DNA from: Mobula hypostoma
Taxonomy: Eukaryota
Length of the DNA: 64,000 nucleotides
Assembly (NCBI RefSeq): GCF_963921235.1
Contig: NC_086105.1
Coordinates: forward strand, 41,292,001 to 41,356,000
Reading direction: 5' to 3'
Shown here: positions 201 to 49,336 of the stretch, one piece after another
Position numbering within the stretch: position 1 is the stretch's first letter
Layout of the letters: each line of letters opens with the position of its first letter
The notes under the pieces: generated by a model
Databases searched by the model: none
Seen by the model: the letters and a program-made list of their open reading frames with translations, nothing else
What the model was told of the DNA's origin: nothing
Program-made: the position numbers and the translations under genes

Positions 201-1767
201 TCTGCATCCTAGAGTGCTTAAGGAAGTAGCCCAAGAAATAGTGGATGCATTAGTGATAATTTTTCAAAACTCGTTAGATTCTGGGCTAGTTCCTGAGGAT
301 TGGAGGGCGGCTAATGTAACTCCACTTTTTAAAAAAGGAGGGAGAGAGAAACCGGGGAATTATAGACCGGTTAGCCTAACGTCGGTGGTGGGGAAACTGC
401 TGGAGTCAGTTATCAAGGATGTGATAACAGCACATTTGGAAAGCGGTGAAATGATCGGACAAAGTCAGCATGGATTTGTGAAAGGAAAATCATGTCTGAC
501 GAATCTCATAGAATTTTTTGAGGATGTAACTAGTAGAGTGGATAGGGGAGAACCAGTGGATGTGGTATATTTGGATTTTCAAAAGGCTTTTGACAAGGTC
601 CCACACAGCAGATTAGTGTGTAAACTTAAAGCACACGGTATTGGGGGTAAGGTATTGGTGTGGGTGGAGAATTGGTTAGCAGACAGGAAGCTAAGAGTGG
701 GAATAAACGGGACCTTTTCAGAATGGCAGGCGGTGACTAGTGGGGTACCGCAAGGCTCAGTGCTGGGACCCCAGTTGTTTAAAATATATATTAATGACTT
801 GGATGAGGGAATTAAATGCAGCATCTCCAAGTTTGCGGATGACACGAAGCTGGGTGGCAGTGTTAGCAGAGAGGAGGATGCTAAGAGGATGCAGGGTGAC
901 TTGGATAGGTTGGGTGAGTGGGCAAATTCATGGCAGATGCAATTTAATGTGGATAAATGTGAAGTTATCCACTTTGGTGGCAAAAATAGGAAAACAGATT
1001 ATTATCTGAATGGTGGCCGATTAGGAAAAGGGGAGGTGCAACGAGACCTGGGTGTCATTATACACCAATCATTGAAAGTGGGCATGCAGGTACAGCAGGC
1101 GGTGAAAAAGGCAAATGGTATGCTGGCATTTATAGCGAGAGGATTCGAGTACAGGAGCAGGGAGGTACTACTGCAGTTGTACAAGGCCTTGGTGAGACCA
1201 CACCTGGAGTATTGTGTGCAGTTTTGGTCCCCTAATCTGAGGAAAGACATCTTTGCCATAGAGGGAGTACAAAGAAGGTTCACCAGATTGATTCCTGGGA
1301 TGGCAGGACTTTCATATGAAGAAAGACTGGATGAACTGGGCTTGTACTCATTGGAATTTAGAAGATTGAGGGGGGATCTGATTGAAACGTATAAGATCCT
1401 AAAGGGATTGGACAGGCTAGATGCAGGAAGATTGTTCCCGATGTTGGGGAAGTCCAGAACGAGGGGCCACCGTTTGAGGATAGAGGGGAAGCCTTTTAGG
1501 ACCGAGATTAGGAAAAACTTCTTCACACAGAGAGTGGTGAATCTGTGGAATTCTCTGCCACAGGAAACAGTTGAGGCCAGTTCATTGGCTATATTTAAGA
1601 GGGAGTTAGATATGGCCCTTGTGGCTACGGGGGTCAGGGGGTATGGAGGGAAGGCTGGGGCGGGGTTCTGAGTTGGATGATCAGCCATGATCATAATAAA
1701 TGGTGGTGCAGGCTCGAAGGGCCGAATGGCCTACTCCTGCACCTATTTTCTATGTTTCTATGTTTCT
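201..1767 (+). mobile_element. Young 5'-truncated CR1-clade LINE (ORF2 reverse transcriptase, open ORF 214-1671)
   Basis: RT motifs QHGF, YLDFQKAFDKV, GVPQGSVLGP, FADD; 3' (TTCTATGT)n tail; direct repeat ATAATATG at 193-200 and 1768-1775 (TSD). Confidence 0.95.
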
Positions 1768-25510: not shown

Positions 25511-26035
25511 AAAATATGACTTTTTTTGTAGGATGAATGAAAAGAGACAATATAAACTGGAAAGCATAATTTGAAAAGTAACACAAGAGCTGAGTTCCGT
25601 GAGGATACATCTGAATACATTGTTGGAGGCTTTGGTACAGACTGAAAAGTCATCAAAATATTAAAAGGTTTTGTATAAGGGGAGGGAATACAAATGTTCA
25701 TGTTGAAGTTCTGTGTAAACAATTGGAGTGTTCTGGTCAATATACTTAAGGAATGGGAAAAGGTTTTGAAACGTATACAGATGAGTTTTAACAAAATGAT
25801 TCCAGGCATGAGGGACTTCAGCTATGCAAATGTACTGGAGTTGTTCTCCTTGATAAGAGGTGATCAGATACAGATTTTAAAATTATGAAGGATACTAAAT
25901 ACCAATGATTTCTCTTGGATAGAGAAGACTGTGTTTTATATAGCACCACATTTTTTGGGATATTCAGTGTTTTAATCAATGATGCATCTTGTGCCAATAC
26001 ATATGAATACAAATCTACATATTAAGATCCATGTA

Positions 26036-26725
26036 GAGTGGATTCCAGTTAATTGGGCCATCAGTTAATCAGGTCAGCCACTTATTTGGGACACTAAGCC
26101 ACTTAATTATCAGTTTCTAACTAGCATCAGTTGTGCGCACTTCTGTGGCCATTGGACACTACACCATGCTTAGAGTGAACACTTTTAAACAGTGTCAGTG
26201 GCATGTGTTTCTGTTCAAGTAGTTACTTTTGTCACTGATAGTTGGGGAGAAGTAAGCAGTAGACAATTCAGAACTGTTTTACTCACTGCAGTTTCAAGCA
26301 TTCAGGCTTGGAGATGGCAGAAATGGCCAGAAGTTAGCAACTACAAAAAATTTGAAGGTATCAACAATCATCTTGAATGTTACACGAAAATGAAGATTTG
26401 GAGGATGCAATTGTCGAAAGCACTGTTTGAAGGCAGTCCACTGTCTGCATGAGGTATCTGCACTGATTTTGTTTACTTACAGTCAATCAACGCAGCAGCA
26501 TACACTGGATGAATTTCTCCATCATTAAATATCAGGAACAGTTTTATAATACTGTAGTAGTATTGGTAGGGTTCTAATTTGTTCTATATTTCATTTAAAT
26601 ACATAACTTATTACTTAGTTAAATGGTAGTTTGTTATTTTCATGAAACTTAAGCTAACTGGGGCAGCCACTTAATTGGGTCAAAAGGTATTCATCCCAAT
26701 GTGTCCCAATTAATTGGAACCACTG
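26036..26725. mobile_element. Tc1/mariner-superfamily (Tigger/pogo-like) MITE
   Basis: TIR (c/g)agtggattccagttaattggg; reverse-oriented relative at 43513-44360. Confidence 0.75.
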
Positions 26726-27241
26726 TTTATTTAGATTGTACTACAGCAATGGAAGTGAATTTTTTGTTTCACAATTAATGTACACATCATCTGCTTTATA
26801 GGTGTATATTAGGGAATCACCCAAATTTAAAGTGTCATGAGGTTATGTACAATTTCTAAATTTTCCACCACAAAGACTTTTGGATTATGTTTTCTCCCCC
26901 TGCTTATACCTGCAACCTTTAGCTAGAATTTAAAATAAGATACATGCAAAATCTATCTACATCCTTCTTATTCACAAAACCAAAAATGTACTGCTGATGC
27001 CCAATTTCTGTCACTCTTTTCCAGGAGGCAATTAATAATACTTGGCAAGGCATCATATGGTAGGATTAAGTCTATCTGCAATGGTTAATGATAGTAACTG
27101 ACAGGGCAGTAACTCATAGAACAACAATTACCTGGACAAAACAAAAGGGAACTATTTGTATTCATTACTGAACAAGAGACCGATAGCATTAAGGGAGGGC
27201 ACAGCATAAAAAAAAATGTTGGAGTGACATTAAACAACTGG

Positions 27242-27401
27242 AAACAACAGGAATTCTGCAGATGCTGGAAATTCAAGCAACATACATCAAAGTTGCTGGT
27301 GAACGCAGCAGGCCAGGCAGCATCTATAGGAAGAAGCGCAGTCGACGTTTCAGGCCGAGACCCTTCGTCAGGACTAACTGAAGGAAGAGTGAGTAAGGGA
27401 T
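27242..27401 (-). mobile_element. 160-bp Penelope terminal-repeat mini-element
   Basis: Matches the 3' end of the Penelope at 46538; flanked by 13-bp TSD ATTAAACAACTGG (27229-27241 and 27402-27414). Confidence 0.85.
27340..27375 (-). ncRNA. Minimal type I hammerhead ribozyme motif (intact core)
   Basis: AGUC-CUGACGA-AGG(GUCUCGG)CCU-GAAA-CG-UC^GACU; stem I AGUC/GACU, palindromic ACGU stem III as described for Penelope-associated hammerheads. Confidence 0.75.
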
Positions 27402-27583
27402 ATTAAACAACTGGTTCACAATAAAAGGTTATTGTCATGCAAGTAGCACTAAAAATTGTACAATCAATTATAATCACAGCAACATTTAAAACAATGTCGA
27501 TGTTTGTAGGGAACCATTTTAATGACATTTATACAGCACAAAATTAACTACTATAGTTTACAGAACAAAAAAAAATACAGAGT

Positions 27584-27685
27584 TTAAATTGGCCATTTCC
27601 ATTGGTTGTGAGGGGCTTCTTCTATTAATGGCTCCCAAGGTTTCCACTTGGCCATTTTCTTTGCGAGAGAAAGTTCACTCTCAGC
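27584..27685 (-). CDS. NDUFA5: NADH:ubiquinone oxidoreductase subunit A5, exon 5
   Basis: tag|[33 protein letters not shown]; hallmark WKWP C-terminus. Confidence 0.97.
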
Positions 27686-27889
27686 CTACAATTCAAACAT
27701 AACAATAAGTACACAAAGGCATTTACATACTGCAAAAGCACCATCAACTCTAATCAAAATTAAGAGTCTGTCAGCAAAGGTATTAAGAATCCTGACTGAA
27801 GTATTTGATACTGCTCTCTGAAATACTTTCCATTAACATTTTAGCCATTGTAGAGGTTCAGTTCAAAACTGCCTTAAGAATGGTCCCAA

Positions 27890-28400
27890 ACTCTTTTCTG
27901 TACTACATTGACGACAGAATTCGTACTGCTTCATGCACCCATGCTGAGCTCGCCAATTTTTATCAATTTTGCATCCAACTTCCATCCTGCCCTTACACTC
28001 ACTTGGTCCATTTCTGTTGTCACACCTCTCTCCCCTTTCTCAATCTTTGTCTCCATATCTGGAGACAAATTGTCGTCACTTGTCTTTTATAAACCTACCG
28101 ATTCCCACCCAGGCTCCTGTAAAAATGCCCTTCTCTTCTCAGTTCCTTCACCTCTGCTGCATCTGTTCCCAAGATGAGGCATCCTTTGCAGGAATTCAGA
28201 GATGTCCTCCTTCTTCAAAGAACAGGATTCCCTTCCTCCACCACTAACATCTGCGCTCACCCCATCAGAGTGAGTTTTTCTAATCAGTTTATTGAGCCTG
28301 TGGGCATCATCCGTGTGGATGCTATTGCCCCAGCACACCACTGCACAGAAGATTGTACTGGCAACAACAGACTGGTAGAACATGTGAAGGAGAGGCCAGA
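27890..28400. mobile_element. Penelope RT fragment (+, ~27890-28260) abutting a Rex1-type fragment (-, ~28262-28400)
   Basis: YIDD..TASCTHAEL and SQFLHLCCICSQDEA match the Penelope ORF; MFYQSVVASTIFCAVVCWG matches the 9321-9920 ORF. Confidence 0.7.
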
Positions 28401-28994: not shown

Positions 28995-29510
28995 AGCAAC
29001 ACACATAACAATTACTGGTGAACGCAGCAGGCCAGGCAGCATATCTAGTAAGAGGTACAGTCGGCGTTTCAGGCCGAGACCCTTCGTCAGGACTAACTGA
29101 AAGAAGAGCTAGTAAGAGATTTGAAAGTGGGAGGGGGAGATCCGAAATGATAGGAGAAGACAGGAGGGGGAGGGATGGAGACAAGAGCTAGACAGTTGAT
29201 TGGCAAAAGGGATATGAGAGGATCATGGGACAGGAGGCCTAGAGAAAGAAAGGGGGGGGAAGCCCAGAGGATGGGCAAGGGGTATAGTGAGAGGGACAGA
29301 GGGAGAAAAAGGAAATTGAGAAAAAAATGTGTGTATATAAATAAATAACGGATGGGGTACGAGGAGGAGGTGGGGCATTAGCGGAAGTTTGAGAAGTCTA
29401 TGTTCATGCTATTAGGTTGGAGGCTACCCAGACGGAATATAAGGTGGTGTTCCTCCAACCTGAGTGTGGCTTCATCTTGACAGTAGAGGAGGCTGTGGAT
29501 AGACATATCA
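28995..29510 (-). mobile_element. Penelope-like 3' fragment with mutated hammerhead (29059-29094)
   Basis: Near-identical to 46540-47070; cleavage triplet GUC changed to GCC. Confidence 0.85.
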
Positions 29511-39401: not shown

Positions 39402-41912
39402 TAGAAACATAGAAACATAGAAAATAGGTGCAGGAGTAGGCCATTCGGCCCTTCGAGCCTGCACCGCCATTTATTATGATCATGGCTGATCATCCAACTC
39501 AGAACCCCGCCCCAGCCTTCCCTCCATACCCCCTGACCCCTGTAGCCACAAGGGCCATATCTAACTCCCTCTTAAATATAGCCAATGAACTGGCCTCAAC
39601 TGTTTCCTGTGGCAGAGAATTCCACAGATTCACCACTCTCTGTGTGAAGAAGTTTTTCCTAATCTCGGTCCTAAAAGGCTTCCCCTCTATTCTCAAACTG
39701 TGGCCCCTCGTTCTGGACTTCCCCAACATCGGGAACAATCTTCCTGCATCTAGCCTGTCCAATCCCTTTAGGATCTTATACGTTTCAATCAGATCCCCCC
39801 TCAATCTTCTGAATTCCAATGAGTACAAGCCCAGTTCATCCAGTCTTTCTTCATATGAAAGTCCTGCCATCCCAGGAATCAATCTGGTGAACCTTCTTTG
39901 TACTCCCTCTATGGCAAGGATGTCTTTCCTCAGATTAGGAGACCAAAACTGCACACAATACTCCAGGTGTTGTCTCACCAAGGCCTTGTACAACTGCAGT
40001 GGTACCTCCCTGCTCCTGTACTCGAATCCTCTCGCTATAAATGCCAGCATACCATTCATCTTTTTCACCGCCTGCTGTACCTGCATGCCCACTTTCAATG
40101 ACTGGTGTATAAGGACACCCAGGTCTCGTTGCACCTCCCCTTTTCCTAATCAACCACCATTCAGATAATAATCTGTTTTCCTATTTTTGCCACCAAAGTG
40201 GATAACTTCACATTTATCCACATTAAATTGCATCTGCCATGAATTTGCCCACTCACCCAACCTATCCAAGTCACCCTGCATCCTCTTAGCATCCTCCTCA
40301 CAGCTGACACTGCCACCCAGCTTCGTGTCATCCGCAAACTTGGAGATGCTGCATTTAATTCCCTCATCCAAGTCATTAATATATATTTTAAACAACTGGG
40401 GTCCCAGCACTGAGCCTTGCGGTACCCCACTAGTCACCGCCTGCCATTCTGAAAAGGTCCCGTTTATTCCCACTCTTTGCTTCCTGTCTGCTAACCAATT
40501 CTCCACCCACACCAATACCTTACCCCCAATACTGTGTGCTTTTAGTTTGCACACTAATCTCCTGTGTGGGACCTTGTCAAAAGCCTTTTGAAAATCCAAA
40601 TATACCACATCCACTGGTTCTCCCCTATCCACTCTACTAGTCACATCCTCAAAAGATTCTATGAGATTCGTCAGACATGATTTTCTTTTCACAAATCCAT
40701 GCTGACTTTGTCCGATCATTTCACCGCTTTCCAAATGTGCTGTTATCACATCCTTGATAACTGACTCCAGCAGTTTCCCCACCACTGACGTTAGGCTAAC
40801 CGGTCTATAATTCCCCGGTTTCTCTCTCCCTCCTTTTTTAAAAAGTGGAGTTACATTAGCCACCCTCCAATCCTCAGGAACTAGTCCAGAATCTAACGAG
40901 TTTTGAAAAATTATCACTAATGCATCCACTATTTCTTGGGCTACTTCCTTAAGCACTCTAGGATGCAGACCATCTGGCCCTGGGGATTTATCTGCCTTCA
41001 ATCCCTTCAATTTACCTAACACCACTTCCCTACTAACATGTATTTCGCTCAGTTCCTCCATCTCACTGGACCCTCTGTCCCCTACTATTTCTGGAAGATT
41101 ATTTATGTCCTCCTTAGTGAAGACAGAACCAAAGTAATTATTCAATTGGTCTGCCATGTCCTTGCTCCCCATAATCAATTCACCTGTTTCTGTCTGCAGG
41201 GGACCTACATTTGTCTTTACCAGTCTTTTCCTTTTTACATATCTATAAAAGCTTTTACAGTCCGTTTTTATGTTCCCTGCCAGTTTTCTCTCATAATCTT
41301 TTTTCCCCATCCTAATTAAGCCCTTTGTCCTCCTCTGCTGAACTCTGAATTTCTCCCAGTCCTCAGGTGAGCCACTTTCTCTGGCTAATTTGTATGCTTC
41401 TTCTTTGGAATTGATACTATCCCTAATTTCTCTTGTCAGCCACGGGTGCACTACCTTCCTTGATTTACTCTTTTGCCAAACTGGGATGAACAATTGTTGT
41501 AGTTCATCCACGCAACCTTTAAATGCTTGCCGTTGCATATCCACCGTCAATCCTTTAAGTGTCATTTGCCAGTCTATCTTAGCTAATTCACGTCTCATAC
41601 CTTCAAAGTTACCCCTCTTTAAGTTCAGAACCTTTGTTTCTGAATTAACTATGTCACTCTCCATCTTAATGAAGAATTCCACCATATTATGGTCACTCTT
41701 ACCCAAGGGGCCTCTCACGACAAGATTGCTAATTAACCCTTCCTCATTGCTCAAAACCCAGTCCAGAATAGCCTGCTCTCTAGTTTGTTCCTCGACATGT
41801 TGGTTCAAAAAACCATCCCGCATACATTCCAAGAAATCCTCTTCCTCAGCACCTTTACCAATTTGGTTCACCCAATCTACATGTAGATTGAAGTCACCCA
41901 TTATAACTGCTA
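39402..41912 (-). mobile_element. Young 5'-truncated CR1 LINE (endonuclease C-terminal part plus RT), single premature stop
   Basis: ORFs 40150-41922 and 39499-40134 are in one frame, separated by CGA>TGA; near-identical to 201-1767. Confidence 0.95.
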
Positions 41913-43512
41913 TATGGATCAAATGCTAGAAGAGTGGAGCTGTCATTATCAAATCTGATCATGTTCACATACAACATAAACTTGTGCATCCTTCTAGCAG
42001 GGATCCCTAGCTGGCTTTGTTTCTCCATTAACTCTTCTTTAAAAGATCTATGCCTAGAAATCTAGTAGTATTTTGATACTGACATCTCCAGATTCTGCAG
42101 ACCTGCAATATTCAGAAAAAAAAATCAAAGCACAATTTAGGAAGGTATTCTGGCATAGTGTGTAAATTTCTTTGCACACCACTAAAGAATAATATGAGAA
42201 TTTTCACTTTAACAGTGATCAACAACTAGCTGGTCACTGGATTAAAAAAGAACCAGATATGATGATTTATTTTTAGAGGCCTCATTTTCAATAAACCCAT
42301 CAGAATCTCAATAACATTTGCAAATTGGGGAAGCAAAATGTCAGTTGTTTTACTAGAAGAACTAAAACAGAGCAACTTGTGCTTTACTTTGGTTTAGAGA
42401 TGTACAGCATGGGAATAGGACATTCAGCCTGCCTCATCCCACTGTCCAACGGGAACCCAGCAATACTAATCTCATTTTCCAGCACTTAGCCTATGATTCA
42501 AGTGCTCAACTATAGATTTCTTAAATGCTGTTAGAAGCCCAACTTCAAACACCCTTTAGTCCAAGTACTCACCAGTCTGGGTGGAAAATGTTCCCATATT
42601 ATCCCCTGTGAATTTCTAAATCTATGTCCTCTTGTCCCTTCTAATTTTCATGTTTCTATATTTCAATAATTTGTGTGATTTCAAAGCAAAATGAGATGGG
42701 ACTGTTCTTTTTTGAGTTCGCACTCTTATTCTTGATTGACCATGTCAGCGTAGCACTGGTGTGGAGCTAAAATCATGTCAGGCTGATGCTAAATATGCAC
42801 TTAATTCATTCCTAATATTTGAAATAAATTCTGGTGTCAACTTGCTATATTTGAAAGTGTTATTGCAATCAGGACACCTTTCATCTGAAGACATGCAATA
42901 ACCATCCAACAAAAGAATTAAGAAATAAAATAGTTATGGATTTATCTTGAGAAACAAAGCAACACATTTCAATGTGATTCTGTAACCTCCCCACCCCTCT
43001 CTCCACCCTAATAGATATACTGCACATTGTAAAATAATACCATTAGCAATTGCTGTGCTTATAATTTGTTCCATCAGCTGTGCTACAAGGTCTCATGGGA
43101 TTTAGTTGCAGCTGGTAGTCTTTGAATAAAGACCCTTTTCTAAAGATGCACACTGTTGAGTCATTGCACCTGTCCACAACAGAAAGTTATGCAGAAAAGA
43201 GAATGACAACAGTGAAATATAATTGCCGAACAATAACAGTCGTGGGAAGTCCAAGGTTAATATTCTGTACTGACACAATTTTAGATCTGTCTGTATCCTG
43301 GGAAAGCCTGTAGTCAAATTGTGGCTACAGGAAAACGTTGCAATGCAAATTTCCAAATTTTGCATTTGCTACTGATCCTGGTTAAAATTTGCCTTGGATA
43401 TTTTTCCATTTTCATATTGCTTTTAAAAGTCAAGATAATCAGATAGCATCAGTGATGCAATCCTCAGTGCACACCATTTCTAGCATTGCTGTGTATAGAA
43501 GCTTTTGGAGTA

Positions 43513-46215: not shown

Positions 46216-46537
46216 GTAACATTAAAAAAAAATCTTCCCCAGTCCAAGGCTAAAGATGAGTGAGGGAAATGGGGCTAGAAATGGGCCAAATGCCTCCTTA
46301 AATGTTGTTCTATCCTCCAAAATCCAGATCTCCTGGTTCAACTCTGCTTTCCTGTCTCATCCCCATATCTCTTGGAGGCTGACTCCAGGTTATGTACAGG
46401 TTCTGTTTTTACGGACATTCATAAGTTGATTTTGTCCATAAGTCAGAAAATAACGATCACTGGATACAACCACCATTACACCAGAGTGTTGTAATGAATT
46501 GTACTGATGAGAGCCAATTAACATCAACATAAATGTA

Positions 46538-49336
46538 ACCAACACACATCAAAGTAGCTGGTGAACGCAGCAGGCCAGACAGCATCTCTAGGAAGAGGTA
46601 CAGTCGACGTTTCAGGCCGAGACCCTTCGTCAGGACTAACTGAAGGAAGAGTTAGTAAGATTTGAAAGTTGGAGGGGGAGGAGGAGATCCAAAATAATAG
46701 GAAAAGACAGGAGGGGGAGGGATGGAGTCAAGAGCTGGACAGATGATTGGCAAAGGGGATATGAGAGGATCATGGGACAGGAGGTCCGGGGAGAAAGACA
46801 AGGGTGGGGGGGAAACCCAGAGGATGGGCAAGGGGTATAGTCAGAGGGACAGACGGAGAAAAAGGAGAATGAGAGAAAGAAAGAATGTGTGTATAAAAAT
46901 AAATAACGGATGGGGTACGAGGGGGAGGTGGGGCAGTAGCGGAAGTTAGAGAAGTCGATGTTCATGCCATCAGGTTGGAGGCTACCCAGACAGAATATAA
47001 GGTGTTGTTCCTCCAACCTGAGTGTGGCTTCATCTTTACAGTAGAGGAGGCCGTGGATAGACGTGTCAGAATGGGAATGGGATGTGGAATTAAAATGTGT
47101 GGCCACTGGGAGATCCTGCTTTCTCTGGCGGACAGAGCGTAGGTGTTCAGCAAAGCAGTCTCCCAGTCTGCGTCGGGTCTCACCAATATATAGAAGGCCA
47201 CATCGGGAGCACCGGACACAGTATATCACCCCAGCCGACTCACAGGTGAAGTGTCGCCTCACCTGGAAGGACTCTCTGGGGCCCTGAATGGTGGTAAGGG
47301 AGGAAGTGTAAGGACATGTGTAGCACTTGTTCCACTTACAAGGATAAGTGCCAGGAGGGAGATCAGTGGGGAGGGATGGGGGGGACGAGTGAACAAGGGA
47401 GTCGCATAGGGAGCGATCCCTGCGGAAAGTGGGAGGGGGAGGGGAGGGAAAGATGTGCTTAGTGGTGGGATCCCGTTGGAGGTGGTGGAAGTTACGGAGA
47501 ATAATATGTTGGACCCGGTGGCTGGTGGGGTGGTAGGTGAGGACCTGGAGAACCCTATTCCTAGTGGGGTGGCGGGAGGATGGAGTGAGAGCAGATGTGC
47601 GTGAAATGGGGGAGATGTGTTTGAGAGCAGAGTTGATGGTGGCGGAAGGGAAACCCCTTTCTTTAAAAAAGGAGGACATCTCCCTCGTCCTGGAATGAAA
47701 AGCCTCATCCTGAGAGCAGATGCGGCGGAGACGGAGGAATTGTGAGAAGGGGATGGCATTTTTGCAAGAGACAGGGTGAGAAGAGGAATAGTCCAGATAG
47801 CTGTGAGAGTCAGTAGTCTTATAGTAGACATCAGTAAATAAGCTGTCTCCAGAGATAGAGACAGAAAGATCTAGAAAGGGGAGGGAGGTGTCGGAAATGG
47901 ACCAGGTAAACTTGAGGGCAGGGTGAAAGTTGGAGGCAAAGTTAATAAAGTCAACGAGCTCAGCATGCGTGCAGGAAGCAGCGCCAATGCAGTCATCGAT
48001 GTAGCGAAGGAAAAGTGGGGGACAGATACCAGAATAGGCACGGAACATAGATTGTTCCACAAAGCCAACAAAAAGGCAGGCATAGCTAGGACCCATACGG
48101 ATGCCCATAGCTACACCTTTAGTTTGGAGGAAGTGGGAGGAACCAAAGGAGAAATTATTAAGAGTAAGGACTAATTCCGCTAAACGGAGCAGATTGGTGG
48201 TAGAGGGGAACTGATTAGGTCTGGAATCCAAAAAGAAGCAGAGAGCTTTGAGACCTTCCTGATGGGGGATGGAAGTATATAGGGACTGGACATCCATGGT
48301 GAAAATAAAGCGGTGGGGGCCAGGGAACTTAAAATCATCGAAAAGTTTAAGAGCGTGAGATGTGTCACGAACATAGGTAGGAAGGGATTGAACAAGGAGG
48401 GATAAAACCGTGTTGAGGTATGCAGAAACGAGTTCGGTGGGGCAGGAGCAAGCTGAGACAATAGGTTTGCCAGGACAGGCAGGTTTGTGGATCTTGGGTC
48501 GGAGGTAGAAATGGGAAGTGCGAGGTGTGGGAACTGTAAAGTTGGTAACAGTGGATGGGAGATCCCCTCAGCGGATAAAGTCGGTGATGGTGTGGGAGAC
48601 AATGGCCTGGTGCTCCTTAGTGGGGTCACGATCGAGGGGTAAATAAGAGGAGGTATCTGTGAGTTGCCGCTGTGCCTCAGCAAGGTAGAGGTCAGTACAC
48701 CAGACTACAACAGCACCCCCCTTATCAGCGGGTTTAATAATAAGGTTAGGATTAGTGCGGAGGGAGTGGAGAGCAGAGCGTTCCAAAGGAGTGAGGTTGG
48801 AATGGGAACAAGGTACGGTGAAGTCGAGACGGTTGATGTCCCGTCGGCAGTTAGCGATAAAGAGATCCAGAGCAGGCAGAAGACCAGAGCGGGGTGTCCA
48901 TGAAGAAGAGGAGGGTTAAAGACGGGAGAAGGGGCCAGAGGTGGGGGTGGAAGTGTCCTTGCTGAAGAAGTAGGCTCGGAGACGGAGACAGCGGAAGAAC
49001 AGTTCCGCATCATGGCGAACACGGAACTCAGTGAGTTGTGGGCGAAGGGGGACAAAGGTGAGGCCCTTACTGAGGACAGAGCGTTCTGCCTCAGACAGTT
49101 GAAGGTCGGAGGGGATGGTAAAGACCCGGCACAGATGAGAGCTGCGATCAGAGGGGGGAGGGGGGAGGCTGGGGGTGTCAGTGGAGAGGGGAGGGTTGGT
49201 GTGAGAGGAAAATGGAGCCTCTGAGTATCCAGGAGCTGACGATGGGATCTGAGGGAGACGGGATTGCAGAGTATTGGTGGGAGAAGGGGAGACAGGAGTC
49301 ACAATAGCAGCACATAAAGACCCAGCCTGGAGTTCA
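46538..49336 (-). mobile_element. Penelope-like element (RT plus GIY-YIG endonuclease), 5'-truncated
   Basis: IKPADKGGAVV, MDVQSLYTSIP, GVAMG..MGPSYA, RYIDD, GVIYCVRC..CGLLYIGET; 12-bp TSD AACATAAATGTA at 46526-46537 and 49337-49348. Confidence 0.95.
46602..46637 (-). ncRNA. Minimal hammerhead ribozyme motif (intact) in the Penelope terminal repeat
   Basis: Identical to 27340-27375. Confidence 0.75.

What the first reader, a model, noticed from the sequence alone, without database searches (positions are those of the whole stretch)
27229..27523. Intact hammerhead ribozyme in sense orientation ~240 nt downstream of the NDUFA5 stop codon
Seen: a 160-bp Penelope terminal-repeat insert with a perfect 13-bp TSD carries AGUC CUGACGA AGG..CCU GAAA CG UC^GACU on the NDUFA5 sense strand. 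Predicted cleavage falls between 27344 and 27343, about 175 nt past a candidate ATTAAA (27518-27523). Known: Penelope-like elements carry minimal hammerheads with a palindromic stem III that can act as dimers. Inference: the insert could give a housekeeping complex I gene a self-cleaving site that assists termination, destroys long-3'UTR isoforms, or limits read-through into the IQUB-like promoter ~4 kb downstream. The insert contains no coding sequence, like a tiny non-autonomous ribozyme-bearing retroelement.
Basis: partly seen in the sequence, partly recalled or inferred. Interest (0 to 1): 0.7.

Follow-up and report, generated by a model that had tools for sequence, protein, structure and literature searches.

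The report
Truncated Penelope retroelement with minimal hammerhead
A 160-base fragment of a common jumping gene (a Penelope-like element) that carries that family's usual minimal hammerhead motif landed recently just downstream of the NDUFA5 gene in this ray-like fish; nothing shows that it cuts RNA there, so it is most likely an ordinary, neutral insertion.

Summary
On the minus strand, 240 nt past the NDUFA5 stop codon, a 160-bp insert (27242-27401) sits between perfect 13-bp target-site duplications. It carries every catalytic-core nucleotide of a type-I minimal hammerhead, with the predicted cut between 27344 and 27343.

It is a 5'-truncated 3' end of a Penelope-like element (PLE), not a separate mini-element. 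At least 8 family copies lie in this window, and one (c46) directly follows an RT + GIY-YIG ORF.

RNA contigs of two related species join 27228 directly to 27402. That is a precise empty site, so the insertion is young and lineage-specific.

"Intact" needs three qualifiers:
- The conserved G10.1-C11.1 pair is G.U here.
- There is no helix III, so the motif could act only as a dimer.
- Rfam finds no hammerhead even at E<=10.

Predicted folds favour inactive conformers. Published PLE minimal hammerheads do not cleave as monomers and need the PLE protein.

The insert lies about 155 nt past the likely main poly(A) site (ATTAAA 27523-27518), in a low-abundance read-through or long-UTR region. That region is also low in a species without the insert.

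No evidence supports a role in termination or isoform control. This scan has already noted many such Penelope hammerheads elsewhere in this genome. Verdict: an ordinary new member of a known kind.

The parts
27242..27401 (-). 160-bp 5'-truncated 3' end of a Penelope-like element (long form, with the optional ~30-nt tail)
   Evidence: blastn finds 7 other copies in the window. The alignment shows that c46, c29 and c25 continue upstream. Many transcriptome contigs of the family end exactly at 27242 (table 7). The stretch is absent from organisms B and I (table 8).
27402..27414 (.). Target-site duplication, copy on the element's 5' side (plus-strand ATTAAACAACTGG)
   Evidence: family D1; the empty-site contigs join 27228 to 27402.
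27229..27241 (.). Target-site duplication, copy on the element's 3' side
   Evidence: family D1.
27339..27376 (-). Minimal type-I hammerhead motif: helix I (27376-27372 with 27343-27339), CUGACGA (27371-27365), bulged A (27364), stem-loop II (27363-27352), GAAA (27351-27348), CGUC (27347-27344); predicted cut between 27344 and 27343
   Evidence: It is identical to copy c46 over 45 nt. There is no Rfam hit.
27584..27687 (-). NDUFA5 last coding exon; stop codon TAA at 27586-27584
   Evidence: translation. (PDB NDUFA5 chains, E=8e-13, C-terminal 32 residues). Spliced RNA contigs end at 27687 with upstream-exon sequence attached (tables 7 and 8).
27518..27523 (-). ATTAAA, the candidate main poly(A) signal, unchanged in all three species laid
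   Evidence: No differences are listed at 27518-27523, table 3. The contig-depth arithmetic fits a main 3' end near 27500 (inference).
28995..29120 (-). Second copy of the same PLE tail (c29) in the last NDUFA5 intron, same orientation; hammerhead core intact except U16.1 to C
46531..48297 (-). Reference family copy c46: PLE ORF (RT, CCHH, GIY-YIG) at 46636-48297, followed by a tail with an identical hammerhead at 46606-46633

Best explanation
The stretch is a young, lineage-specific, 5'-truncated insertion of the 3' end of a Penelope-like retrotransposon (PLE).

How it arose (inferred from the known PLE mechanism): the PLE's GIY-YIG endonuclease cut an AT-rich site downstream of NDUFA5. Reverse transcription began at the outer of the two PLE start sites, so the copy carries the optional tail. 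It then stopped after 160 nt, leaving a 13-bp target-site duplication.

The fragment carries the minimal type-I hammerhead that every copy of this family has about 100 nt from its 3' end. In the retroelement, this motif is thought to process tandem PLE transcripts as a dimer with help from the PLE protein.

At this site the motif is a single copy with no helix III and a G.U pair at 10.1-11.1. It sits about 155 nt past the likely main NDUFA5 poly(A) site, in RNA that is a small fraction of the gene's transcripts. The most likely reading is that it does little or nothing to NDUFA5 expression: a neutral passenger.

Shown here: the sequence anatomy, family membership, the empty site in relatives, and transcription through the region. 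Inferred: the insertion mechanism, the position of the main poly(A) site, and the lack of cleavage.
For: 1. Family and PLE identity.
- There are 8 copies in 64 kb.
- c46 follows an ORF with a weak RVT_1 hit and a weak GIY-YIG hit and a visible IY...YIG motif.
- The nearest Atlas clusters carry HTH_animal + RVT_1 + GIY-YIG, score 0.96.
- 812 homologues were found; the best is 92% identical (Mobula hypostoma) and many carry PF00078 + PF01541 + PF26215.
- A whale-shark PLE has the same hammerhead module after its ORF.

2. Truncation.
- c46 and c29 share 534 bp, and c25 shares 403 bp, reaching upstream of the point where c27 begins.

3. A real and recent insertion.
- The X5 contig joins 27228 to 27402 with no extra letters.
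- The X19 contig does the same within an alignment wobble.
- These contigs differ from the window by 1.7% and 2.8% (table 8).

4. Match to the published minimal hammerhead: 5-bp helix I, an unpaired nucleotide between A9 and 10.1, and a palindromic 15.2-16.2 (PMC4209133).

5. The optional 30-40 bp tail and the AT-rich ATT target match PMC11167929. Copies c46, c29 and c25 end about 27-30 nt earlier than c27, c54 and c63.

6. Poor prospects for cleavage.
- Single minimal hammerheads show no detectable cleavage (PMC4209133).
- The Anolis PLE hammerhead cleaves only with PLE protein, and no RNA-seq reads start or end at its cut site (PMC11167929).
- Here the monomer minimum-energy fold pairs G5-G8 with C15.2-C17. 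In 111-251 nt contexts the best fold lacks the hammerhead helices by 2.8-5.6 kcal/mol.
- The double-hammerhead dimer scores -12.9 kcal/mol, against -25.2 for two closed monomers and -33.5 for an extended duplex.

7. Position relative to the mRNA.
- The exon contig depth is 116 (X1) and 1115 (X2). The contig downstream of the insert is 13.6 and 22.
- In X19, which lacks the insert, the contig covering the exon plus 1.1 kb has a mean of only 19.9, while the bin at the exon junction reaches 91.8.
- So the distal region is also minor without the insert. This is a rough inference from contig means.
Against: - No direct test of cleavage was possible. All four runs were assembled contigs, which break at both edges of the high-copy repeat (27268 and 27372) and cannot show an RNA end at 27344.
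- The 8- to 50-fold depth drop across the insert in organism A would also fit cleavage or termination at the insert.
- All catalytic-core nucleotides are present, and the motif is identical to that of the ORF-linked copy c46. The motif is therefore as good as the family's own.
- A same-orientation partner copy (c29) lies 1.7 kb upstream in the same pre-mRNA. Family RNA is very abundant in the transcriptomes (summed depth 10^5-10^6 over the insert). Dimer partners, and possibly PLE protein, could therefore be available.
- An engineered fast hammerhead placed in a 3' flank does give exonuclease entry and helps polymerase release (PMC2288634).
Confidence: 0.8

Rival explanations
1. One reading: the inserted hammerhead self-cleaves NDUFA5 read-through or long-3'UTR RNA at 27344/27343. 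It would do so as a dimer with the intronic copy c29, with another transcript, or with abundant PLE RNA, helped by PLE protein. The effect would be to aid termination, remove long isoforms, or protect the downstream promoter.
For: - The core is complete and in sense orientation.
- In a domain-swapped dimer, c29 would supply an intact core, stem II, GAAA and 15.1-15.2 to cut c27's site. This follows.
- Contig depth drops 8- to 50-fold across the insert in organism A.
- Engineered 3'-flank hammerheads promote exonuclease entry (PMC2288634).
Against: - Minimal PLE hammerheads are inactive as single copies and slow even as dimers (PMC4209133, PMC6765202).
- No RNA-seq ends were seen at the Anolis PLE site (PMC11167929).
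- The active dimer fold is about 12-20 kcal/mol worse than the inactive alternatives.
- Pair 10.1-11.1 is G.U.
- The distal region is also low in a species without the insert.
- The insertion is absent from close relatives, so the gene works without it.
Confidence: 0.07
2. The insert affects NDUFA5 3'-end formation or long-isoform stability by means other than ribozyme cleavage. Examples are its stable hairpins, a polymerase pause, small-RNA targeting of PLE sequence, or residual PLE promoter activity.
For: - The insert folds stably: -40 kcal/mol for 160 nt, with a long hairpin in the tail.
- Family RNA is highly represented in the transcriptomes.
- PLE terminal repeats are reported to hold promoters (PMC6765202, PMC11167929).
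Against: There is no direct evidence. The fragment is only the last 160 nt of the element. The depth data cannot separate this from plain use of the proximal poly(A) site.
Confidence: 0.08
3. The hammerhead-like motif is a chance resemblance and the family carries no ribozyme at all.
For: - Rfam finds nothing.
- The 8 window copies give no significant covariation: one double-sided change, and 61 of 500 shuffles do as well.
Against: - The pattern is expected 0.01 times per window.
- The same module sits after the PLE ORF in a whale shark, whose ORF product is 69% identical to the c46 ORF.
- It meets the features that PMC4209133 lists as arguing against chance.
- Older copies differ mainly by CpG decay.
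Confidence: 0.03

Closest known systems
Minimal hammerheads (min-HHR) in the terminal repeats of metazoan Penelope-like elements (Cervera & De la Pena 2014, PMC4209133; Lunse et al. 2017, cited in PMC6765202)
   Same: Type-I layout; no helix III, with a palindromic ACGU at 15.1-16.1; short helix I (5 bp); an unpaired nucleotide before stem II; location in the PLE non-coding end next to an RT/GIY-YIG ORF; mostly found as dispersed single copies from truncated PLEs.
   Different: Stem II is short here (4 bp plus a tetraloop, against 7-8 bp in the schistosome families). In this young subfamily the conserved G10.1-C11.1 pair is G.U; older copies and the whale-shark copy have C. Activity was not tested.
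Poseidon PLE of Anolis carolinensis (PAc; Frangieh et al. 2024, PMC11167929)
   Same: The hammerhead lies about 70-100 nt before the insertion's 3' end; a fraction of copies carry an optional ~30-nt tail; the target is AT-rich with ATT; copies are 5'-truncated.
   Different: In PAc the ORF starts within the hammerhead. In this copy the ATG after the cut site opens only a 16-codon frame. The PLE clade of this family was not determined.
Non-LTR retrozymes and their monomers in vertebrate genomes (Cervera & De la Pena 2020, PMC7229834; Li et al. 2026 bioRxiv 10.64898/2026.07.22.740005)
   Same: Short, non-coding, hammerhead-bearing, PLE-related sequences. In Xenopus the few that overlap exons tend to lie in 3'UTRs.
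   Different: Retrozymes are tandem repeats with canonical type-I hammerheads that give circular RNAs. This is a solitary truncated PLE end with a target-site duplication, and there is no sign of tandem units or circles.
Discontinuous hammerhead in rodent Clec2 3'UTRs (Martick et al. 2008, cited in PMC4209133) and engineered 3'-flank hammerheads (West et al. 2008, PMC2288634)
   Same: A hammerhead in sense orientation in or after a 3'UTR, where cleavage could lower mRNA or feed exonuclease-driven termination.
   Different: Those are fast-cleaving, complete three-helix ribozymes. This one lacks helix III and is expected to be nearly inactive alone.

Membership tests
Penelope-like element (PLE) | A single ORF with a reverse transcriptase followed by a C-terminal GIY-YIG endonuclease | tested here: met
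   Met for family copy c46. RVT_1 hit at E=4e-4 and GIY-YIG hit at E=0.034; both are below Pfam's cut-off but in the right order. The IY...YIG and CCHH motifs are visible. Atlas neighbours carry RVT_1 + GIY-YIG + HTH_animal, score 0.96. Homologues carry PF00078 + PF01541. The 160-bp insert itself has no ORF; its membership rests on 91% DNA identity to the c46 tail.
Penelope-like element (PLE) | A hammerhead motif in the non-coding terminal repeat next to the ORF | tested here: met
   The c46 hammerhead (46606-46633) lies just 3' of the ORF end at 46636. The whale-shark copy L001:4183-4210 lies about 270 nt after its ORF.
Penelope-like element (PLE) | Insertion signature: variable 5' truncation, a target-site duplication, an AT-rich target, and an optional 30-40 bp 3' tail | tested here: met
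   13-bp duplication; precise empty site in relatives; target ...TTTAAT; short and long 3' ends among the copies, as described in PMC11167929.
Hammerhead ribozyme, minimal type I (PLE min-HHR) | Core nucleotides C3 U4 G5 A6 N7 G8 A9, G12 A13 A14, the A15.1-U16.1 pair, and H17 | tested here: met
   CUGACGA ... GAAA C G U C, with all positions present. In this minimal form the A15.1-U16.1 pair can form only between two molecules.
Hammerhead ribozyme, minimal type I (PLE min-HHR) | Helices I and II can form, with an unpaired nucleotide between A9 and 10.1 | tested here: met
   Helix I has 5 bp (including one G.U) and stem II has 4 bp plus a tetraloop, with A27364 unpaired. 90% of cells pair across the 8 copies, against 17-43% when the partners are slid. 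Covariation is not significant with this few copies.
Hammerhead ribozyme, minimal type I (PLE min-HHR) | The conserved G10.1-C11.1 pair | tested here: not met
   This copy, c46, c29 and c50 have U at 11.1, giving G.U. Copies c25 and c58 and the whale-shark copy have C. The change is at a CpG. Its effect on activity is unknown.
Hammerhead ribozyme, minimal type I (PLE min-HHR) | Palindromic 15.2-16.2, so that two copies can build helix III | tested here: met
   ACGU at 27348-27345. However, an overlapping 6-nt palindrome, GUCGAC, favours an inactive duplex that buries C17.
Hammerhead ribozyme, minimal type I (PLE min-HHR) | Site-specific self-cleavage | not testable with these tools
   Only assembled contigs were available. 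This needs an in vitro assay or end-specific RNA sequencing.
Rfam hammerhead families (Hammerhead_1 and others) | A score at or above the covariance model's gathering threshold | tested here: not met
   No hammerhead hit at gathering score over the whole window, and none at E<=10 over 27000-27800. This is expected for a motif without a helix III hairpin, so it weighs little against a min-HHR.
Non-LTR retrozyme | Tandem repeats of a short hammerhead-bearing unit | tested here: not met
   A single copy flanked by unique sequence and a target-site duplication.

The most novel reading that the evidence does not exclude
A lineage-specific Penelope fragment has given a housekeeping complex I gene a working co-transcriptional cleavage site. 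The 3'-flank copy (c27) would be cut in a domain-swapped dimer whose catalytic half comes from the same-orientation intronic copy c29, 1.7 kb upstream in the same pre-mRNA, or from the very abundant PLE RNAs and protein in trans. This would change NDUFA5 read-through or long-UTR levels relative to sister species that lack the insert.
Probability: 0.05. Interest if true: 0.55.

Novelty: new member of a known kind. Interest (0 to 1): 0.17.

Why it matters
As it stands, it matters little. Dispersed, truncated Penelope ends with minimal hammerheads number in the thousands in fish, amphibian and reptile genomes. This scan has already noted many in this genome.

Its one useful property is that it forms a clean natural experiment. 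The same 3' flank of a highly expressed housekeeping gene exists with the hammerhead in this species and without it in two close relatives, and a second copy sits in the last intron.

If raw RNA reads or end-specific libraries showed cleavage at 27344, that would be rare in vivo evidence that solitary minimal PLE hammerheads act on host transcripts. That question is still open: Frangieh et al. 2024 found no such ends in Anolis.

Tried and rejected
- Rfam at gathering score (whole window) and at E<=10 (27000-27800) found no hammerhead. The only hits were chance-level ones; one of them, to UnaL2, overlies the hairpin in the PLE tail.
- Covariation on the 8 window copies was uninformative. The copies are too few, and they differ mainly by CpG decay.
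- Read laying could not test for RNA ends.
- A joint from 26070/26073 to 27558, seen in three species, looked like an alternative 3'UTR form. The letters between its two sides contain a motif (TTATTTGGGACAAC) that also occurs on the minus strand elsewhere in the window, and a close variant lies at 26063-26073, so I take the joint as a repeat-borne artefact.
- Fetching DNA around the closest ray homologues (Mobula, Hypanus, Chiloscyllium), to see whether U11.1 is the subfamily's master state, failed. The answers were 'no DNA: file too large', 'not on record', or queue full.
- A PDB sequence search with the PLE ORF found nothing.
- Lunse et al. 2017 is not held in the paper library.
- I expected the literature to say that 3'-flank hammerheads cannot feed Xrn2. 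PMC2288634 reports the opposite for a fast engineered ribozyme, so I dropped that argument.

Full report
**Observation**

Reading the minus strand of 27100-27700 confirms the motif letter for letter:
- Helix I 5' strand: UAGUC, 27376-27372.
- First core box: CUGACGA, 27371-27365.
- Unpaired A: 27364.
- Stem II: GGGU / GCCU around a CUCG loop, 27363-27352.
- Second core box: GAAA, 27351-27348.
- C15.2 G16.2 U16.1 C17: 27347-27344.
- Helix I 3' strand: GACUG, 27343-27339.

The predicted scissile bond lies between 27344 and 27343.

The 13-bp direct repeat lies at 27229-27241 and 27402-27414 and encloses exactly 160 bp.

The upstream ORF fragment translates to ...[33 protein letters not shown]. 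It matches the C-terminal 32 residues of NDUFA5 chains in complex I structures at E=8e-13. The stop codon is 27586-27584, so the cut site is 240 nt downstream, on the same strand. ATTAAA lies at 27523-27518.

A relaxed core pattern is expected 0.01 times per window and is found twice. Both hits are in copies of one repeat family.

Rfam reports no hammerhead at gathering score for the window, or at E<=10 for 27000-27800. Because the motif has no helix III hairpin, this says little either way.

**What the insert is**

blastn of the 160 bp against the window finds seven more copies, at 75-91% identity, on both strands.

Aligned with their flanks, three of them (c46, c29, c25) continue upstream of the point where the NDUFA5 copy starts. 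c46 and c29 share 534 bp. The insert is therefore a 5'-truncated copy, not a distinct mini-element.

Copy c46 lies directly 3' of a 553-codon ORF (46636-48297, minus strand). The evidence that this ORF is a Penelope-like element's:
- A weak RVT_1 match at its N-terminus.
- A CCHH motif, and an ...IYCVRC...YIGET...R...EH... stretch that gives a weak GIY-YIG match.
- Its nearest ESM Atlas clusters carry HTH_animal + RVT_1 + GIY-YIG, score 0.96.
- A database search gives 812 homologues. The best are from rays and sharks: 92% identity to a Mobula hypostoma protein and 75-88% to Hypanus sabinus. Many invertebrate relatives carry PF00078 and PF01541.

RT followed by GIY-YIG is the defining architecture of Penelope-like elements (PMC4209133, PMC11167929).

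A whale-shark homologue's locus has the same module about 270 nt after its ORF. It comprises a hammerhead box, GAAACGUC, and a conserved segment of about 50 nt.

Copies c46, c29 and c25 end about 27-30 nt before the end seen in c27, c54 and c63. This corresponds to the optional 30-40 bp 'tail' that Frangieh et al. trace to two reverse-transcription start sites. The AT-rich target containing ATT also fits their data (PMC11167929).

**Age**

Read laying on 25600-28200 with four runs shows that X1 and X2 (organism A) match the window almost perfectly. They are RNA: contigs stop at the exon boundary 27687 with upstream-exon sequence attached.

In X5 (organism B), a single 1327-nt contig aligns to 26386-27228 and then, with no intervening letters, to 27402-27687. 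This removes exactly the insert plus one copy of the duplication.

X19 (organism I) shows the same within an alignment wobble of 12 letters.

These contigs differ from the window by about 1.7% and 2.8%. The insertion is therefore specific to the window's lineage and young, which fits the perfect target-site duplication.

**Is the hammerhead 'intact'?**

All catalytic-core positions are present, and the motif is identical over 45 nt to that of the ORF-linked c46.

It shows three of the four features that Cervera and De la Pena list as arguing against chance:
- an unpaired nucleotide between A9 and 10.1;
- a palindromic 15.2-16.2;
- a family context.

The fourth feature, G10.1-C11.1, is G.U in this copy and in c46, c29 and c50. 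Copies c25 and c58 and the whale-shark copy keep C. The site is a CpG.

Among the window's copies, only c27 and c46 keep the whole core:
- c29 has U16.1 to C.
- c25 has an insertion in the first box and C15.2 to U.
- c54, c58 and c63 have lost G12.
- c50 has C15.2 to U.

Pair counting gives 90% standard pairs, against 17-43% for slid partners. There is only one double-sided change, which 61 of 500 shuffles also reach. The fold is compatible with these few copies but not proven by them.

**Likelihood of cleavage at this site**

There is no helix III, so the motif can only act as a dimer (PMC4209133; PMC6765202).

Nearest-neighbour folding disfavours the active form:
- The 48-nt monomer's best fold pairs G5-G8 with C15.2-C17.
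- In 111-, 160- and 251-nt contexts, the best fold lacks the hammerhead helices. Forcing them in costs 2.8-5.6 kcal/mol, because CUCUUCC upstream pairs with GAAGGGU.
- A domain-swapped double hammerhead scores -12.9 kcal/mol. Two closed monomers score -25.2, and an extended duplex through the overlapping GUCGAC palindrome scores -33.5.

These energies ignore tertiary contacts. They do agree with experiment:
- A single minimal hammerhead gave no detectable cleavage, and dimers cleaved poorly (PMC4209133).
- The Anolis PLE hammerhead cleaved only when PLE protein was added.
- Its catalytic mutants did not impair insertion.
- No RNA-seq reads began or ended at its cut site (PMC11167929).

**Position relative to the mRNA**

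In organism A, the exon contig runs from 27687 through the ATTAAA to 27372/27373. It stops there, where thousands of family contigs pile up. The next unique contig covers 26388-27268.

Mean depths in organism A are:

| Run | Exon contig | Downstream contig |
|---|---|---|
| X1 | 116 | 13.6 |
| X2 | 1115 | 22 |

In X2 the intron is at about 8.

In X2, the extra depth in the exon-junction bin implies about 2200 for the upstream exons. The 315-nt contig's mean of 1115 then fits full depth to about 27500 and very little beyond.

In X19, which lacks the insert, the contig covering the exon plus 1.1 kb has a mean of only 19.9, while the junction bin reaches 91.8. So the distal part is also a minor species without the insert.

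These are rough inferences from contig means, and the tool itself warns against reading them as levels. They suggest that the ATTAAA drives the main 3' end. They also suggest that the insert sits about 155 nt past that end, in read-through or a minor long isoform. The depth drop does not need the insert to explain it.

Contigs cannot show ends, so the key test (RNA ends at 27344) remains undone.

**The proposed functions**

An efficient engineered hammerhead in a 3' flank does cleave co-transcriptionally and gives exonuclease an entry that promotes polymerase release (PMC2288634). It requires fast cleavage, however, which this class lacks.

One point in favour of the idea is that c29 lies in the last intron, in the same orientation, 1.7 kb upstream. 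In a domain-swapped dimer, the half that would cut c27 uses c29's core, stem II, GAAA and 15.1-15.2, all of which are intact.

Family RNA is also very abundant in the transcriptomes.

I give the functional reading about 7%, a non-ribozyme effect of the insert about 8%, and a chance motif about 3%.

**Comparison with what is known, and novelty**

This is a new copy of a known kind. Cervera and De la Pena already reported that most minimal hammerheads are dispersed single motifs from truncated PLEs. Li et al. (2026 preprint) note that the few PLE-related hammerhead sequences overlapping exons in Xenopus tend to lie in 3'UTRs.

Other first-stage notes of this scan describe the same Penelope hammerhead family at high density elsewhere in this genome, with 12-14 bp duplications. 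I confirmed these only for this window.

The only mildly unusual points are the G.U at 10.1-11.1 in an apparently young subfamily, and the with/without comparison across close species.

**Verdict**

The Penelope identity is supported. The 'non-autonomous mini-element' reading and all functional inferences are unsupported. Interest is low.

Noticed in passing
window 28995-29120 (-): A second copy of the same PLE tail (c29) lies in the last NDUFA5 intron, in the same orientation as the 3'-flank copy. Its hammerhead core is intact except U16.1 to C. So the pre-mRNA carries two family hammerheads 1.7 kb apart, much like the two terminal repeats of a full PLE.
   Followed up: partly
window 46636-48297 (-), and P0002, P0003: The PLE ORF next to c46 is 75-92% identical to ray proteins. 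Some of those are annotated as isoforms of host genes (divergent protein kinase domain 1C in Hypanus sabinus, chitinase domain-containing protein 1 in Mobula hypostoma). These are probably transposon ORFs merged into host gene models.
   Followed up: no
window 27242-27275 versus the ends of c46 (about 46531), c29 (28995) and c25 (25511): The family has two 3' ends about 27-30 nt apart: a short form and a long form with a tail. A predicted long hairpin (AGCAAC / GUUGCU) sits just before the short end. A chance-level Rfam hit to the UnaL2 LINE 3' element (E=7.7) overlies this hairpin.
   Followed up: partly
window 27242-27251 and 27402-27414 (-): The last 7 nt of the insert (GTTGTTT) repeat within the target-site duplication (CCAGTTGTTTAAT). 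This is microhomology between the element's tail and the target, and could reflect priming by annealing.
   Followed up: no
L001:4183-4210 (whale shark, NC_063345.1): A homologous PLE tail about 270 nt after the ORF carries the same hammerhead module. It has C at 11.1 but U4 to C (CCGAUGA) and a poor helix I, so this copy is decayed.
   Followed up: partly
window 214-1671 (+) and 40150-41922 (-): LINE-type ORFs with strong RVT_1 hits (E about 1e-33). The second also has an Exo_endo_phos_2 endonuclease domain. They are unrelated to the Penelope family.
   Followed up: no
window 26035-26730: The NDUFA5 3' flank also holds other repeats with very high summed depth in all four transcriptomes. A joint from 26070/26073 to 27558, seen in three species, appears to be repeat-borne rather than an NDUFA5 isoform.
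   Followed up: partly
window 27499 and 27126: RNA contigs of the window's own species read A at 27499 (window G) and G at 27126 (window A). These are probably polymorphisms, or differences between the assembled individual and the RNA donors.
   Followed up: no
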